DNA of 20,269 bases from sequence record NC_074633.1; one strand, 5' to 3'. The notes beneath the pieces are model-generated. The model was not told where the DNA came from. It searched no databases and saw nothing but the letters and a program-made list of their open reading frames with translations. Positions 2,075 through 10,455 of the stretch are shown here, piece by piece. Both the position numbers and the translations under genes were made by a program. How positions within the stretch are numbered: position 1 is the stretch's first letter; each line of letters begins with the position of its first letter.

Positions 2075-3382
2075 GTGGCATCCCTAGAAGAGTTCAAAAA
2101 ATTGTTTGAAGAGAATTCGTTTGTTTTTAATCCGAGAGATGAAAATCGAATTTTATACTACATTTTCAGAAGTACCAACATTCCAGAAGAAAAGAAGGCT
2201 AACGCACTAAAGGCATGGCACTTAGGAAACGATAACCAGTACTTTGAAATGTATAAAGCGTTTTCTGATGAAATAAAATTTATATCTAAAATTGTGAAAT
2301 TCAAAGAGAAAGACGGCGAAATTGTCGCTTACTTCCAAAACGGCTTTGTCGGAAAGTTTGATCCAAGAATGTTGGCAGACAATCCGGATGACGCTTATAA
2401 TTTAATGCAGTCCTATCTTCTAGTTAAAATCAAAAAAACAACAGACAGTTGGGAAATTTACGATATTATACCAGTTGAACCTGCAAAAAATGTAGATGTC
2501 GCGAAACAACTATTGCAATTTGTAGAGTCTGAGCATATGACATACGCATCTTTGCTTTACGCTTTCGGCTATGACGTGGAAAAGATGGACCCGAATGATG
2601 TCTTTCTGACAGTCCCAAGATTTTTTTCACTTTTTGTCTCTTCATATTCAAAAAGAAGATACAATGTCATTGAGATTTCTAACCCTGGGACTGGCAAAAC
2701 TTCAGTTTTTACAATTTTACAAGAGGTTTTTAATTTTAGATATTATACTGAACCGCCAACTTATGCCAATTTAGTGTATGATGCCAGAAATAATGTGTAT
2801 GGCGCAGTCTATCTTGCTAAAGGTTTAATATTTGACGAAATTCAAACTTGGAAAGATAATACAAATCGTAAAAATATGGACACTATAAATTCCACACTTT
2901 CAACTGGTATCGAAAATTGTATCTGGACAAGAGGTGCCGGGACTGAAAGTAAATCCGCAACAATCCACAGATGTTTGCCGATAATTTATGCAGGAAATCC
3001 GATATCTATGACACTAGATAGATTCGCTTCAACTGAAGTTGAAGATTACCTACAAAAGTATGAAATTTTTACTCCGGCGATATTGGACAGATTCCACTTA
3101 ATCCATATTACAATAAAGAAAACTTACGACAAAGTTGGAAGTAGGAGGGTTCTTTATCCTTCAGTGCTGAAAGCCTTAGTCGACATTCTTCAAGAGAAAT
3201 TGAATCAACAAAATCACTTTGTGGAATGCCAAAATTTCTCATCAAGACGATATGAGCAGGCAGTTGACATCCAACTTCTATTGCGGACTTTGGATTTACA
3301 AAATGACGAAATTGAAAAAGACCAAGATGCATTTTGTTCACGACTTCAACAATATATGCGATTTATGGATCTTGGCGGGTGA
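2075..3382 (+). CDS. AAA+ ATPase / putative helicase (SIRV2 gp18/ORF436-like)
   Basis: Walker A SNPGTGKTS, Walker B LIFDE, sensor region IIYAGN, arginine-finger-like LDRF; syntenic with SSB and Cas4-like genes. GTG start. Confidence 0.88.
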   Translation: MASLEEFKKLFEENSFVFNPRDENRILYYIFRSTNIPEEKKANALKAWHLGNDNQYFEMYKAFSDEIKFISKIVKFKEKDGEIVAYFQNGFVGKFDPRMLADNPDDAYNLMQSYLLVKIKKTTDSWEIYDIIPVEPAKNVDVAKQLLQFVESEHMTYASLLYAFGYDVEKMDPNDVFLTVPRFFSLFVSSYSKRRYNVIEISNPGTGKTSVFTILQEVFNFRYYTEPPTYANLVYDARNNVYGAVYLAKGLIFDEIQTWKDNTNRKNMDTINSTLSTGIENCIWTRGAGTESKSATIHRCLPIIYAGNPISMTLDRFASTEVEDYLQKYEIFTPAILDRFHLIHITIKKTYDKVGSRRVLYPSVLKALVDILQEKLNQQNHFVECQNFSSRRYEQAVDIQLLLRTLDLQNDEIEKDQDAFCSRLQQYMRFMDLGG

Positions 3383-4014
3383 GAAAATTGGTTTACGAAA
3401 ATAGGATTAAGGAAAGCTTCAAAAAGCTTTATCCGGAGGATACGCTTTATCCGTCAGAAATTTGTCATTGTCTGAGGCGTTCAATTTTAGCAAGAAGAAT
3501 TGAACATATAAAAAATCTTACAAGTGAAGTTTTAGATTATGGATTAGCGATACATGAAGATGTCGAAACGTATTTTAAAGAAAAGTTAGGTTGCGAAACT
3601 GAAAAAGCAATTGAATATGAGATTGAAGGCGTAAAAATTTCAGCAAGAGTTGATTTATTGTGCGGAAGTGACCTTCTGGAGCTTAAGACGGTTTCGCATT
3701 TTATTCGTCAGCCTTACCAAGATCACATTGTTCAAGTTTCACTTTATCATCATATACTGTCGCAACTTGGCTATAAAATTGATAATGTTTACATTATTTA
3801 CATTAATAGGCAAAATTATGACGTTCAAGAATTTAAAATTCAAAAAGATCAACTTGAACAAGGATTGAAAAGCGCTATCGACTTCATTAAAAATTACAAA
3901 AAATACAAAGACGAGCAGAACATATTCAAAATCCCGACTGGCGATTCAACATTTTGTAAAAATTGCGAATTTAAGAACATTTGCTATGGATCTTTGGACG
4001 TTTTTTTAAAATGA
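3379..4014 (+). CDS. cas4: Stand-alone Cas4-like (RecB-family) nuclease (SIRV2 gp19-like)
   Basis: YPSEICHC, H...RVD...ELKT, QxxxY and C-terminal CKNC...C Fe-S ligands. The GTG start overlaps the upstream TGA (GTGA at 3379-3382). Confidence 0.9.
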   Translation: MRKLVYENRIKESFKKLYPEDTLYPSEICHCLRRSILARRIEHIKNLTSEVLDYGLAIHEDVETYFKEKLGCETEKAIEYEIEGVKISARVDLLCGSDLLELKTVSHFIRQPYQDHIVQVSLYHHILSQLGYKIDNVYIIYINRQNYDVQEFKIQKDQLEQGLKSAIDFIKNYKKYKDEQNIFKIPTGDSTFCKNCEFKNICYGSLDVFLK

Positions 4015-4082
4015 ATGTATAATTCTCTAATTCATCCCCGGGGTGCTATGCTTATAATCTATTTGTTATTAACTATTTTATT

Positions 4083-4409
4083 ATGAAGAATAAGTTTGAA
4101 GATTGGAATAAATATAGATCTGACGTCAATAAGATTATCGTTGAGTATTTTAACAAAGTCGGCATAATGGCGACAACTAGAGCTTTATATTTCTCATTTG
4201 CACAAAAAATATTGGCAATTGTTAAAAAACATCAAGATGGAAGTCTTATTAATAAATTGATTGAAGGAAATATACAATATTTTGTGACTGCATTTGATGC
4301 AAATGAAAAAGTATTGCGTGATATTGTAAAAATTATAATTTTAGCTAAAATTGAGAAAATGGATCCTGATGATATATTGGAAGAAGTTTTGACACAAAAA
4401 GCTAACTAA
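4083..4409 (+). CDS. N-terminally truncated paralog of the major capsid protein (SIRV2-type four-helix bundle)
   Basis: Gap-free manual alignment to the neighbouring MCP: RALYFSFAQK vs RAIYQGYGLK and YFVTAFDANEKVL vs YYVSAFGANPQIL. Confidence 0.75.
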   Translation: MKNKFEDWNKYRSDVNKIIVEYFNKVGIMATTRALYFSFAQKILAIVKKHQDGSLINKLIEGNIQYFVTAFDANEKVLRDIVKIIILAKIEKMDPDDILEEVLTQKAN

Positions 4410-4410
4410 T

Positions 4411-4460
4411 CATATACAAAATATTATGTATATGGATTTTTTGCATTGAATTTTTATAAG
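4411..4460 (+). promoter_or_regulatory. MCP promoter: palindrome CATATACA-N8-TGTATATG, GCATTGAATTT box and TATA (TTATAAG)
   Basis: 8-bp inverted repeat at 4411-4418/4427-4434 with AATATT in the spacer; box at 4443-4453; TATA at 4454-4460; ATG at 4491. Confidence 0.65.
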
Positions 4461-4490
4461 CTATTAATTCTAATATCTAATTGACAAAAA

Positions 4491-4895
4491 ATGGCGAAAG
4501 GACACACACCAAGAAGTTATTCGCAAAGGTATGGTAAATGGAATGCAAAATTCACCGCATTTTCAAATCCAACTGTTGCCAGCACAATCCTAACTAATGT
4601 TGCACCGACCGCGCAAGAGAACTTCCAGACTAACGTACCTAGATTTACGTCAGTCAATGAGCAAGTTTCGGCGGTATTGACTCAGTACGGCGTGACTGGT
4701 CCTTCTAGAGCAATTTACCAAGGCTATGGTCTAAAGGTTGCGAGAGCGCTTAACAGGATTGGCGCTGGTCCCGCTCTAACGAATATGGTCGCTGGCTTAA
4801 AGGCTTATTACGTTTCAGCGTTTGGCGCTAATCCACAAATTTTAGATGCTGTGACTAACATAATCCTAGGATCTCCTAACGGATACGTAAGCTAA
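4491..4895 (+). CDS. Major capsid protein (rudivirus 134-aa DNA-binding coat protein)
   Basis: MAKGHTPRSYSQRYGKWNAKF...GYVS is highly similar to SIRV1/2 ORF134 and has the same length. Confidence 0.97.
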   Translation: MAKGHTPRSYSQRYGKWNAKFTAFSNPTVASTILTNVAPTAQENFQTNVPRFTSVNEQVSAVLTQYGVTGPSRAIYQGYGLKVARALNRIGAGPALTNMVAGLKAYYVSAFGANPQILDAVTNIILGSPNGYVS

Positions 4896-4975: not shown

Positions 4976-5200
4976 ATGTTTGAGGAATATTTAAGACAAA
5001 AAGGTTTCGAACCCCATCATATTTCAATTCTTAAAGATTTCTTGATTGAAATAAAAGAGGCATTAGGTATAAATGCTAGGAATTATGAATTAGACGACGT
5101 CATAAATTCTATTGTTGAATATTTTGCGACAACATATATGCTAAGAAGAGAAGATCTTTTCCAATTAATAAATGGAGCAATTGAGGACGGTGTTGTGTAA
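4976..5200 (+). CDS. Hypothetical alpha-helical protein, 74 aa
   Basis: Has its own TATA box and abuts the glycosyltransferase start (TAAATG). Confidence 0.75.
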   Translation: MFEEYLRQKGFEPHHISILKDFLIEIKEALGINARNYELDDVINSIVEYFATTYMLRREDLFQLINGAIEDGVV

Positions 5201-6220: not shown

Positions 6221-7147
6221 CGCATATACTGTTGCAGGACCAGTTGCCCATGCATAGACATTTGCCGGATTATTAACTTCAAATTCTATGCTATCACCTG
6301 GCAAAATTGGGAAATTGTTATACAATTGATTTCCAATGTAAACTATGTAATTTGACAAGTTCTGAAGTATAATTTTTACAGTTTGCAGTGCAGGACCAGA
6401 ATAAATTGGCGATGGTGTTGTTGAAACTTTCAGTTGCAAACCTTGAATTGCAGGCGGTGACATATACATTGTCAACTTATTAATTGTGCTTGATAGTGAG
6501 TTCATTGCCAAGTAAATGTAAGACAGTGCGTAAAGCAAAGTGTCTGCAACACTGTTAATTGCCCTGGATAAACCAGTAACCATCTGATCTGTTAATTTTG
6601 CACTAACCAAATAGATATTTTCGTAAACATTTTGAATTAGTTGAGGCAAATACAAAGTCGGTAATATTGCAGTTTTTAGCTGATTATCAACGCCAATCAC
6701 AACTTGATATAGATTTTCATAAACGTTTGCAATTTCTTGTTGTAAAGCGCTTTGTGTCTGTGCGACTGTCCCGGCGGTAAGTTTTGCGATTGCATTATAA
6801 ACGTCGGTCGGCATTTGTTCAATTGCTTCATATAGTTGAAATTGACTGTTTAAAATTGCTTGAATTTGTTCTATTGCAGAACCAACAAATCCTGCGATAT
6901 AAATTGGGTCTTGTTCAGTTAGCACTGGCTGGCCTTCAACATAAACTTCCTCTGAAAAATTCCCAACTTGCGCAGTAATATTGTTTGGGACATAAAGACT
7001 GCCATTTTTGAATAATTGCCTATCGATTAGTGAACCGCCAAAATAGATGTCTGACAACGTCAGCACTGCCGTGTTCCACATGGCAGATGTCAGTCTCTGG
7101 AACGGCTTTGCAAGAAGACTACTAATTGTCGCATATTGGATGCTCAT
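6203..7147 (-). CDS. Conserved rudiviral protein, probable minor virion component
   Basis: 314 aa. N-terminal LTSAMWN motif, central amphipathic coiled region, and a C-terminal beta domain resembling a segment of the 604-aa protein. Confidence 0.7.
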   Translation of the reverse strand: MSIQYATISSLLAKPFQRLTSAMWNTAVLTLSDIYFGGSLIDRQLFKNGSLYVPNNITAQVGNFSEEVYVEGQPVLTEQDPIYIAGFVGSAIEQIQAILNSQFQLYEAIEQMPTDVYNAIAKLTAGTVAQTQSALQQEIANVYENLYQVVIGVDNQLKTAILPTLYLPQLIQNVYENIYLVSAKLTDQMVTGLSRAINSVADTLLYALSYIYLAMNSLSSTINKLTMYMSPPAIQGLQLKVSTTPSPIYSGPALQTVKIILQNLSNYIVYIGNQLYNNFPILPGDSIEFEVNNPANVYAWATGPATVYALFEVL

Positions 7148-10362: not shown

Positions 10363-10408
10363 ATATTCAACAGTAATATTCATAATATTCATTATATGCA
10401 TATTAAGC
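10363..10408 (+). repeat. 27-bp element (copy 2) plus ATATGCATAT palindrome in a divergent promoter region
   Basis: 10363-10389 is identical to 1987-2013; 10394-10408 is the exact reverse complement of 17107-17121. Confidence 0.92.
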
Positions 10409-10455
10409 ATTGAATTTATTTTAAGTTGTTGTGACAAAATAGATAACGATAAAAA

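What the first reader, a model, noticed from the sequence alone, without database searches (positions are those of the whole stretch)
4083..4895. Tandem capsid genes: a truncated, AT-rich MCP paralog directly upstream of the MCP
Seen: the 108-aa ORF aligns without gaps to MCP residues ~53-127 (VN, G, RAxY, K, G, Y-V-AF-AN, L, II conserved). It lacks the basic N-terminal DNA-wrapping arm and has an acidic tail. Sampled 60-nt lines give about 23-27% GC versus about 48% in the MCP gene. Known: rudivirus virions use an MCP homodimer, whereas lipothrixviruses and tristromaviruses use two paralogous MCPs. Inference: an evolutionary intermediate or relic, possibly repurposed as an end cap, assembly chaperone or length terminator because it cannot wrap DNA. 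It may already have been noted in related rudiviruses.
Basis: partly seen in the sequence, partly recalled or inferred. Interest (0 to 1): 0.7.

Follow-up and report, generated by a model that had tools for sequence, protein, structure and literature searches.

The report
Armless capsid-protein paralog beside rudivirus MCP
The 108-aa gene just upstream of the major capsid protein of Metallosphaera rod-shaped virus 1 is a real, conserved, selectively maintained copy of the capsid protein's outer four-helix domain that lacks the DNA-wrapping arm; it is already annotated and has been noted in print, and its function is still unknown.

Summary
The window is the complete genome of Metallosphaera rod-shaped virus 1 (MRV1, MN876843). 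The ORF at 4083-4409 is MRV1 gp09, deposited as "putative coat protein". The gene at 4491-4895 is the MCP, gp10.

**Observation: confirmed.**
- gp09 matches the MCP without gaps (24% identity over 74 aa, E 4e-11) and Pfam Sulf_coat_C (E 1.8e-30).
- The AlphaFold2 model is a four-helix bundle plus a fifth helix. Its best solved-structure matches are rudiviral MCPs.
- gp09 lacks MCP residues 1-52, the DNA-wrapping arm.
- gp09 has the lowest GC of the 27 genes and the MCP the highest.

**It is not a relic.**
- Intact orthologs exist in SSRV1, ARV2 and ARV3, with dN/dS of 0.05-0.10 among the close pairs.
- gp09 has its own conserved TATA box.
- A distant homolog, ARV1 ORF124, is unannotated. A metagenomic relative (P0053) sits in a contig with its own MCP. 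Together these form a supported clade separate from all MCPs.

**It is not a second body protein.** No PDB chain matches it at ortholog level, although the SSRV1 virion structure is deposited.

**Other points.**
- The acidic tail is specific to MRV1.
- A 2025 preprint already describes Hoswirudivirus as having two coat-gene copies.
- The function is inferred only: an accessory, MCP-interacting assembly or minor virion factor.
- gp11 (74 aa) may be a third protein with the MCP fold.

The parts
4051..4058 (+). TATA-box-like element (CTTATAAT) about 29 nt upstream of the gp09 ATG. This implies a separate, near-leaderless transcript.
   Evidence: The sequence was read. The block GCTATGCTT[A/T]TAA is conserved in MRV1, SSRV1, ARV2 and ARV3 (alignment A4). 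The promoter function is inferred from the usual Sulfolobales TATA-to-start spacing (own knowledge).
4083..4409 (+). MRV1 gp09 (ORF09-108): an armless MCP paralog. It has four bundle helices (8-26, 30-49, 53-71, 75-89), a fifth helix (95-104) and a conserved N-terminal K-F-x-D-W-N-K-Y-R motif.
4437..4442 (+). T6 run between gp09 and the MCP promoter; a possible archaeal terminator signal.
   Evidence: The sequence was read. The run is present in MRV1 and SSRV1, is T4 in ARV3 and is absent in ARV2, so it is not strictly conserved. The terminator function is an inference.
4451..4459 (+). TATA box of the MCP gene (TTTTTATAA), preceded by a GCATTGAAT element (4443-4451).
   Evidence: It is invariant in the four hoswirudiviruses. 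The GCATTGAAT element is shared with the gp20 upstream region at 10407-10424.
4491..4895 (+). MRV1 gp10, the major capsid protein (134 aa): a basic N-terminal arm (1-52) plus a four-helix bundle.
   Evidence: Pfam Sulf_coat_C E 2.1e-75 over its full length. It is 81-94% identical to other rudiviral MCPs. Its nearest solved relative is the SSRV1 virion protein 6WQ0.
4976..5200 (+). gp11 (74 aa, pI 4.6): a candidate third, minimal protein with the MCP fold. Its stop codon abuts the start of the glycosyltransferase gene gp12.
   Evidence: The gp09-family HMM gives E 4.9e-4. hhalign against the gp09 family gives P 1.4e-4 and against MCPs P 2.7e-4, both in the same register. An AF2 model made without any MCP in the alignment has AFV1 MCP 3fbl as its best PDB hit (TMq 0.71). 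This is suggestive, not proven.

Best explanation
**Shown.** gp09 is an expressed, selectively maintained paralog of the rudiviral major capsid protein. It keeps only the outer four-helix-bundle domain, plus an extra C-terminal helix and a conserved N-terminal DW-KY motif. It has no counterpart of the ~50-residue basic arm that wraps the A-form DNA in the MCP. It belongs to a small, old family: hoswirudivirus gp09 and its orthologs, ARV1 ORF124, and the metagenomic protein P0053. It is not part of the helical body of the virion.

**Inferred mechanism.** Because it keeps the MCP bundle but cannot hold DNA, it most likely acts through bundle-to-bundle contacts with the MCP as an accessory factor. 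Candidate roles are:
- keeping the MCP from assembling prematurely or without DNA;
- capping the lattice at the filament ends;
- serving as a low-copy virion component.

The family identity is close to certain. The functional step is only the most plausible of several.
For: - Homology and fold: (hhalign probability 98%).
- Arm missing.
- Purifying selection: dN/dS is 0.05-0.10 for the MRV1, SSRV1 and ARV2 pairs and 0.26-0.30 against ARV3. The MCP gives 0.07-0.09.
- Conserved length and motifs in the four genomes.
- Its own conserved TATA box.
- Family older than the genus: ARV1 ORF124 matches at 26% identity over 99 aa, E 2e-11. The match includes the N-terminal motif and the fifth helix, with structural TMq 0.87 and rmsd 1.1 Å. 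P0053 matches at 36% identity over 75 aa, E 1e-11. The clade has 98/90 support.
- Always near the capsid genes. It is adjacent to the MCP in four viruses. In contig L019 one gene (the glycosyltransferase) separates it from the MCP. In ARV1 it lies 2.9 kb away.
- Not in the virion body. phmmer of gp09 against all PDB sequences finds only MCPs, at E 8.7e-6 or weaker with about 25-30% identity. Yet the SSRV1 virion 6WQ0 is in the PDB and SSRV1 gp10 is 92% identical to gp09. The ICTV profile shows SSRV1 as an MCP homodimer.
Against: - No direct evidence of any interaction with the MCP, of presence in virions, or of expression timing.
- SIRV2, SRV, SBRV1, SIRV8 and SMRV1 have no detectable homolog, so rod assembly does not need it.
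- In ARV1 the gene stays next to the Cas4-like nuclease rather than the MCP.
- The gp09 promoter lacks the GCATTGAAT element shared by the MCP and gp20 promoters. This hints at different regulation.
- The acidic tail that might have suggested shielding of the arm is not conserved.
- The AF2 alignment contained MCPs, so the fold match is partly circular.
Confidence: 0.4

Rival explanations
1. Exapted bundle with a function unrelated to the capsid. On this reading the four-helix domain was recruited for host interaction, or for genome replication and repair, and no longer touches the MCP.
For: - gp09 is only 24-30% identical to any MCP, while MCPs are 81-94% identical to each other.
- In ARV1 the homolog sits directly after the Cas4-like nuclease, as in MRV1, but away from the MCP.
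- It has family-specific features absent from MCPs: the DW-KY motif and the fifth helix.
- Its promoter differs from those of the structural genes.
Against: - It lies within 3 kb of the MCP and glycosyltransferase genes in all three genome architectures seen.
- It is not among the predicted early or anti-defence genes of ARV1, ARV2 and ARV3 in PMC11065993.
- No other domain or motif was detected.
Confidence: 0.3
2. A young tandem duplicate on the way to a lipothrixvirus-like heterodimeric capsomer.
For: - The two genes are tandem and on the same strand.
- The AU test does not reject a tree in which the gp09 clade and the rudiviral MCPs share one ancestor (p 0.29-0.38).
- Other adnaviruses use two paralogous MCPs.
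Against: - The family includes ARV1 ORF124 and P0053, which comes from a virus with a different (124-aa) MCP type.
- gp09 is no closer to its own MCP than to distant MCPs.
- Both subunits of known heterodimers keep their DNA-binding N-terminal helices. gp09 has none.
- The SSRV1 body is a homodimer.
Confidence: 0.1
3. Second major capsid protein that co-polymerises with the MCP along the rod.
For: It has the same fold and is the neighbouring gene.
Against: - It has no arm with which to bind DNA.
- The SSRV1 ortholog is absent from the PDB although the SSRV1 virion structure is deposited.
- The SSRV1 capsomer is described as a homodimer.
Confidence: 0.03
4. Non-functional relic of a duplication.
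For: The gene is truncated relative to the MCP, has the lowest GC of any gene, and is very divergent.
Against: - dN/dS is 0.05-0.10 with dS of 0.56-0.80.
- It is intact in four genomes, with 60 invariant positions.
- It has a conserved promoter.
- It has an ancient homolog in ARV1.
Confidence: 0.03

Closest known systems
Rudiviral major capsid protein (SIRV2 P134, SSRV1 gp11; Pfam PF12193; PDB 3J9X, 6WQ0, 3F2E)
   Same: It has the same C-terminal four-helix bundle. Foldseek gives TMt 0.77 and rmsd 2.0 Å to 3F2E. It shares the G-x-x-x-x-x-R-A-x-Y and A-F-x-A-N motifs and passes the Pfam threshold.
   Different: It has no N-terminal DNA-wrapping arm. It has an extra C-terminal helix and a DW-KY N-terminal motif. 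It is only 24-30% identical to MCPs and is not in the solved virion body.
MCP1/MCP2 paralog pairs of Lipothrixviridae, Ungulaviridae and Tristromaviridae (e.g. AFV1 ORF132/ORF140)
   Same: Two genes of the same fold sit side by side in a filamentous archaeal virus. AFV1 MCPs are the next-best structural matches.
   Different: In those viruses both paralogs keep their N-terminal DNA-binding helices and form the heterodimeric capsomer. Here one copy is armless and the capsomer is a homodimer.
ARV1 ORF124 (gp18, 'hypothetical protein')
   Same: It is a distant member of the same family: 26% identity over 99 aa, E 2e-11, TMq 0.87. It occupies the same position directly after the Cas4-like nuclease.
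   Different: It is 124 aa long, with a longer C-terminus. It is not adjacent to the MCP because of ARV1's inversions. It falls below the Pfam threshold (17.6 bits), so it is not annotated as coat-like.
Duplicate SIRV2-like MCP genes reported in Hoswirudivirus, Demeterviridae and Ahmunviridae PBV300 (bioRxiv 10.1101/2025.08.23.671958)
   Same: [quoted passage not shown] It suggests that only one copy is structural.
   Different: In the passages read, the preprint reports no selection analysis, ARV1 homolog or armless architecture for the hoswirudivirus copy. It raises inactivation as a possibility for such copies, which the data here contradict for gp09.

Membership tests
Pfam PF12193 Sulf_coat_C / SIRV2-type MCP fold | Sequence match above the curated gathering score | tested here: met
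   106.2 bits against a cutoff of 25.2, E 1.8e-30.
Pfam PF12193 Sulf_coat_C / SIRV2-type MCP fold | C-terminal four-helix bundle | tested here: met
   The AF2 model has pLDDT 88 and pTM 0.82, with four helices plus one more. The top PDB hits are 3f2e, 3j9x and 6wq0, with probability 1.00 and TMt up to 0.77. Caveat: MCPs were in the AF2 alignment.
Functional rudiviral major capsid protein | Basic N-terminal segment of about 50 residues that forms the helix wrapping A-form DNA | tested here: not met
   gp09 aligns only to profile positions 44-129, i.e. MCP 53-126. Its 12 N-terminal residues show no significant match to the arm.
Functional rudiviral major capsid protein | Building block of the helical virion body | tested here: not met
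   No PDB chain matches gp09 at ortholog level, although the SSRV1 virion (6WQ0; its MCP sequence occurs as 46 chains in that entry) is present. The SSRV1 capsomer is described as a homodimer. This evidence is indirect: a low-copy or terminal location is not excluded.
Heterodimeric MCP1/MCP2 system (Lipothrixviridae, Tristromaviridae) | Two adjacent paralogous MCP genes | tested here: met
Heterodimeric MCP1/MCP2 system (Lipothrixviridae, Tristromaviridae) | Both paralogs carry N-terminal DNA-binding helices and contact DNA equivalently | tested here: not met
   gp09 has no arm. The requirement is as described for AFV1 in PMC5517147.
Heterodimeric MCP1/MCP2 system (Lipothrixviridae, Tristromaviridae) | Physical heterodimer of the two proteins | not testable with these tools
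   No multimer prediction or experimental data were available.
Pseudogene / decaying duplicate | Relaxed selection, frame disruption, loss of expression signals | tested here: not met
   dN/dS is 0.05-0.10. The ORF is intact in four genomes. The TATA box is conserved.
gp09 / ARV1 ORF124 / P0053 family (armless MCP-like proteins; defined here) | Monophyly apart from MCPs; shared fifth helix; no arm | tested here: met
   The clade has 98/90 support on 73 columns. The pairwise alignments extend into the fifth helix. Only five clusters were found among 5.8 billion proteins. Caveat: the branches are long, and the AU test cannot exclude an origin from a rudiviral MCP.

The most novel reading that the evidence does not exclude
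The capsid locus of hoswirudiviruses would be an array of three genes with the SIRV2-type bundle. gp09 is armless and basic, with an extra helix. gp10 is the MCP. gp11 is minimal and acidic. On this reading the two small paralogs would be dedicated assembly partners of the MCP, acting as chaperone, cap or length control. gp09 would belong to an ancient accessory lineage shared with ARV1 and with an uncultured virus group. That would give a concrete, testable example of how capsid-protein duplication in Adnaviria produces new functions other than a heterodimeric capsomer.
Probability: 0.15. Interest if true: 0.6.

Novelty: already known. Interest (0 to 1): 0.35.

Why it matters
Reference texts state that rudiviruses encode a single MCP that forms a homodimer, and that other adnaviruses use two paralogs. 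A conserved, armless second copy in one rudivirus lineage is a natural experiment on what the outer bundle domain can do without the DNA arm, and on how capsid genes diversify.

The gene and its coat-protein homology are already public, so the added value here is limited to four points:
- The copy is under strong purifying selection, so it is not inactivated.
- The family is older and wider than the genus (ARV1 ORF124, P0053).
- It is excluded from the solved virion body.
- gp11 is a possible third member.

The function remains open. It could be tested readily in the SSRV1 / Saccharolobus solfataricus system.

Tried and rejected
- **Internal deletion rather than N-terminal truncation.** MAFFT placed gp09 'DWNK' on MCP W17-K20. 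Shuffling gives p 0.17-0.68, so this is not supported.
- **More family members.**
  - The IMG/VR scan returned only ARV2 itself.
  - The metagenome contig scan found none.
  - The word-indexed search with gp09 alone found only its own cluster.
  - The profile search added ARV3, ARV1, one ARV1-like 1.1-kb contig and P0053.
  - Eight IMG/VR rudivirus contigs have no second copy within 3 kb of the MCP.
  - A family-HMM scan of all ORFs of SIRV2, SRV, SBRV1, SIRV8 and SMRV1 hit only their MCPs.
They were rebuilt as A3.
- **Conserved block after the Cas4 stop (4016-4028).** It is not repeated in the genome above chance.
- **The sigma-70 and intrinsic-terminator scan** is uninformative for an archaeal virus.
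- **NCBIfam** gave nothing relevant. **PHROGs** gave only the MCP family, annotated as of unknown function.
- **ARV1 ORF74a and ORF74b** are not homologs of gp11.
- **AU tests** could not decide whether the gp09 clade arose from a rudiviral MCP.
- **Papers.** The SSRV1 and SIRV2 structure papers (PMC7443925, PMC5512286) are not held. The MRV1 description paper does not discuss the paralog in its text, and no supplement is held.
- **Anti-defence reading.** The orthologs are not in the predicted anti-defence gene lists of PMC11065993.

Full report
**Identity of the window.** The 20,269-base window is 100% identical to the complete genome of Metallosphaera rod-shaped virus 1 (MRV1, MN876843 / NC_074633; Rudiviridae, genus Hoswirudivirus; Pozzuoli, Italy). 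The finding's ORF at 4083-4409 is MRV1_gp09, deposited as "putative coat protein" (ORF09-108). The gene at 4491-4895 is gp10, "putative major capsid protein". The local gene order, all on the + strand, is: ATPase gp07, Cas4-like nuclease gp08, gp09, MCP gp10, gp11 (74 aa), glycosyltransferase gp12.

**Check of the observation.**
- BLASTP aligns gp09 residues 13-86 with MCP 53-126 without gaps: 18/74 identical, E 4e-11.
- Pfam Sulf_coat_C matches gp09 at 106 bits, E 1.8e-30, covering profile positions 44-129 of 134.
- An HMM built from MCPs alone gives 34 bits.
- Profile-profile comparison of the gp09 family with MCPs gives 98% probability.
- Nothing in gp09 corresponds to MCP residues 1-52, a basic segment with pI 10.6. 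In SIRV2 this N-terminal tail forms the long kinked helix that wraps the DNA (PMC5517147).
- MAFFT suggested that the gp09 N-terminus matches MCP residues 12-21, which would mean an internal deletion. This is not significant (p 0.17-0.68).

**Base composition.**
- gp09 is the most AT-rich of the 27 genes (27.2% GC, z -2.0). The MCP is the most GC-rich (45.2%, z +3.1). The genome is 34.1%.
- Most of the contrast lies at codon position 2 (0.21 against 0.49), so it reflects amino-acid composition.
- MCP genes exceed the genome GC in SIRV2, SRV, ARV1 and the other hoswirudiviruses.
- The paralogs ARV1 ORF124 and P0053 track their own genomes.
- The composition is therefore no evidence of foreign origin.

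**Acidic tail.** The tail is acidic in MRV1 only (2 K/R against 6 D/E). It is neutral in SSRV1, ARV2, ARV3 and ARV1.

**Structure.**
- AlphaFold2 on a 10-row alignment gives mean pLDDT 88 and pTM 0.82. The helices are at 8-26, 30-49, 53-71 and 75-89, with a fifth at 95-104.
- Against the PDB, the three best Foldseek matches are rudiviral coat proteins: 3F2E (TMt 0.77, rmsd 2.0 Å), 3J9X and 6WQ0. AFV1 MCPs follow.
- Caveat: MCP sequences were in the alignment. The independent sequence evidence is strong, however.

**Distribution.**
- tblastn finds orthologs only in SSRV1 (92% identity), ARV2 (85%) and ARV3 (61%). All lie in the same position between Cas4 and the MCP.
- Structure search against predicted viral proteins then turned up ARV1 Q50I53 (TMq 0.87, rmsd 1.1 Å over 103 columns). 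This is ARV1 ORF124 (gp18), annotated as a hypothetical protein.
- ORF124 aligns with gp09 at 26% identity over 99 residues (E 2e-11). The alignment includes the N-terminal D-W-x-K-Y motif and the fifth helix.
- ORF124 lies directly after the Cas4-like nuclease, as gp09 does. ARV1's inverted gene block puts its MCP 2.9 kb away.
- ORF124 scores below the Pfam threshold (17.6 bits), which explains why it is not annotated.
- An exhaustive HMMER search of 1.84 billion representative proteins gave 56 family members. The best match to a gp09-family HMM is P0053 (167 aa; 36% identity over 75 aa, E 1e-11).
- P0053 lies in an 8.3-kb contig (L019) that has its own 124-aa MCP, a glycosyltransferase and an Hjc resolvase.
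- A profile search of 5.8 billion proteins found only five clusters of this family.
- Family-HMM scans of all ORFs of SIRV2, SRV, SBRV1, SIRV8 and SMRV1 hit only their MCPs. Eight IMG/VR rudivirus contigs have no second copy near the MCP.

**Evolution.**
- In a maximum-likelihood tree of the bundle domain (60 sequences, 73 columns), one clade holds gp09, its three orthologs, ARV1 ORF124 with its metagenomic twin, and P0053. Its support is 98/90.
- That clade is separate from the rudiviral MCP clade (99/98) and from all other MCPs.
- AU tests do not reject an origin from a rudiviral MCP (p 0.29-0.38), so the root of the family is unresolved.
- The duplication predates the split between ARV1 and the hoswirudiviruses. 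One member sits in a virus with a different MCP type. This is not a recent tandem duplicate.

**Selection and expression signals.**
- dN/dS for gp09 is 0.05-0.10 among MRV1, SSRV1 and ARV2, with dS of 0.56-0.80. Against ARV3 it is 0.26-0.30.
- The same genomes give 0.07-0.09 for the MCP and 0.06-0.13 for Cas4.
- Sixty positions are invariant in the four orthologs, including K-F-x-D-W-N-K-Y-R and P-D-[DE]-[IV]-L.
- A TATA-like box (CTTATAAT, 4051-4058) about 29 nt upstream of the ATG is conserved in all four genomes. The MCP's own TATA box (4451-4459) is conserved as well. The two genes therefore have separate promoters.
- The MCP promoter carries a GCATTGAAT element shared with gp20. gp09 lacks it.
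- gp09 is a functional gene, not a relic.

**What it is not.** SSRV1 gp10 is 92% identical to gp09, and the SSRV1 virion structure (6WQ0) is in the PDB. Even so, phmmer of gp09 against all PDB sequences returns only MCP chains, at E 8.7e-6 or weaker with about 25-30% identity. The ICTV profile shows SSRV1 as an MCP homodimer and states that rudivirids encode a single MCP. The paralog is therefore not a co-major capsid protein of the helical body. A low-copy or terminal location is not excluded.

**Most likely mechanism (inferred).** gp09 keeps the outer bundle but has no means of holding DNA. In three different genome architectures it lies next to or within 3 kb of the MCP and glycosyltransferase genes. 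I consider an MCP-interacting accessory role the best-supported reading, at about 0.4. Candidate roles are an assembly modulator or chaperone, a lattice cap at filament ends, or a minor virion protein.

The main rival, at about 0.3, is exaptation to a role unrelated to the capsid. Four observations favour it:
- the extreme divergence from MCPs;
- the family-specific motifs;
- the linkage to Cas4 in ARV1;
- the different promoter.

Most rudiviruses lack the gene, so it cannot be essential for rod assembly as such.

**Prior knowledge.** GenBank already calls gp09 and its SSRV1 and ARV3 orthologs "putative coat protein". The paper describing MRV1 does not discuss the gene in its text. [quoted passage not shown] It raises the possibility that only one copy is structural. 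The finding is thus already known.
- the selection result;
- the armless architecture with a fifth helix;
- the ARV1 and metagenomic homologs and their clade;
- the exclusion from the solved virion body;
- the gp11 lead below.

**Lead: gp11 (4976-5200).** This 74-aa acidic protein sits directly after the MCP and is conserved only in the four hoswirudiviruses. Its dN/dS is 0.07-0.20.
- The gp09-family HMM hits it at E 4.9e-4.
- hhalign aligns it in one consistent register to the gp09 family (P 1.4e-4, 67 columns) and to MCPs (P 2.7e-4).
- An AF2 model built from two gp11 sequences, with no MCP in the alignment (pLDDT 78), has the AFV1 MCP domain 3FBL as its top PDB hit (TMq 0.71, probability 0.80). 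3F2E ranks fourth.
- The gp09 model also matched the SSRV1 74-aa protein in BFVD (TMt 0.71).
- This is suggestive of a third bundle paralog, but the statistics are weak for a small helical protein.

Noticed in passing
window 4976-5200 (gp11): This 74-aa acidic protein directly downstream of the MCP may be a third, minimal protein with the MCP fold. hhalign against the gp09 family gives P 1.4e-4, in register. The best PDB match of an MCP-free AF2 model is AFV1 MCP 3FBL. It occurs only in the four hoswirudiviruses and is under purifying selection.
   Followed up: partly
L017 (ARV1 NC_009965) 6315-6689: ARV1 ORF124 (gp18, 'hypothetical protein') is a distant homolog of gp09. It sits in the same position after the Cas4-like nuclease but away from the MCP. 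It scores below the Pfam Sulf_coat_C threshold, so it is unannotated.
   Followed up: yes
L019 1562-2065 (P0053), with an MCP at 3235-3609: An 8.3-kb metagenomic contig carries its own 124-aa MCP, a glycosyltransferase and Hjc. It also encodes a 167-aa protein whose C-terminal half is the closest non-Italian relative of gp09 (36% identity). Its ~85-aa N-terminal extension is of unknown nature.
   Followed up: partly
L018 5215-5493; L022 2386-2637; L024 400-636; L025 2428-2739: Several metagenomic virus-like contigs encode short (78-103 aa) proteins that have the Sulf_coat_C bundle domain but no arm. They sit next to glycosyltransferase, methyltransferase or Hjc genes. In L024 the 78-aa ORF overlaps an upstream 105-aa ORF, so it could be a split or frameshifted MCP.
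   Followed up: partly
window 4443-4460 and 10407-10424: The MCP and gp20 (79 aa) upstream regions share a GCATTGAAT element immediately before the TATA box. ARV2's MCP upstream region (ATGCATATTAAGCATTCAATTT) is nearly identical to MRV1's gp20 upstream region. This may be a shared promoter module of the structural genes. gp09 lacks it.
   Followed up: partly
L002 (SSRV1) about 1145-1440: SSRV1 has an AT-rich insertion of about 290 bp between Cas4 and its gp09 ortholog. The insertion begins with a second copy of the gp09 promoter-like sequence GCTATGCTTTTAAA (alignment A4).
   Followed up: no
window 4016-4037: A block just after the Cas4 stop codon (TGTATAATTCTCT...) is conserved in all four hoswirudiviruses. 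It is not repeated elsewhere in the genome above chance. Its role is unknown.
   Followed up: partly
window 3334-4014 vs 3379-4014: The mechanical ORF for the Cas4-like nuclease starts at TTG 3334 (226 aa). GenBank uses GTG 3379 (211 aa), which overlaps the ATPase stop codon. The true start was not examined.
   Followed up: no
protein P0059 (1.1-kb contig): A near-identical copy of ARV1 ORF124 is deposited as a hypothetical protein of a 'Firmicutes bacterium' MAG. It is probably a mis-binned rudiviral contig.
   Followed up: no
MRV1, ARV1, ARV2, ARV3 (from the literature): The MRV1 description paper notes that ARV1, ARV2, ARV3 and MRV1 lack a recognisable P98-type pyramid (egress) protein. This set largely overlaps the viruses that carry the gp09 family. 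gp09 has no transmembrane segment, so no link is proposed.
   Followed up: no
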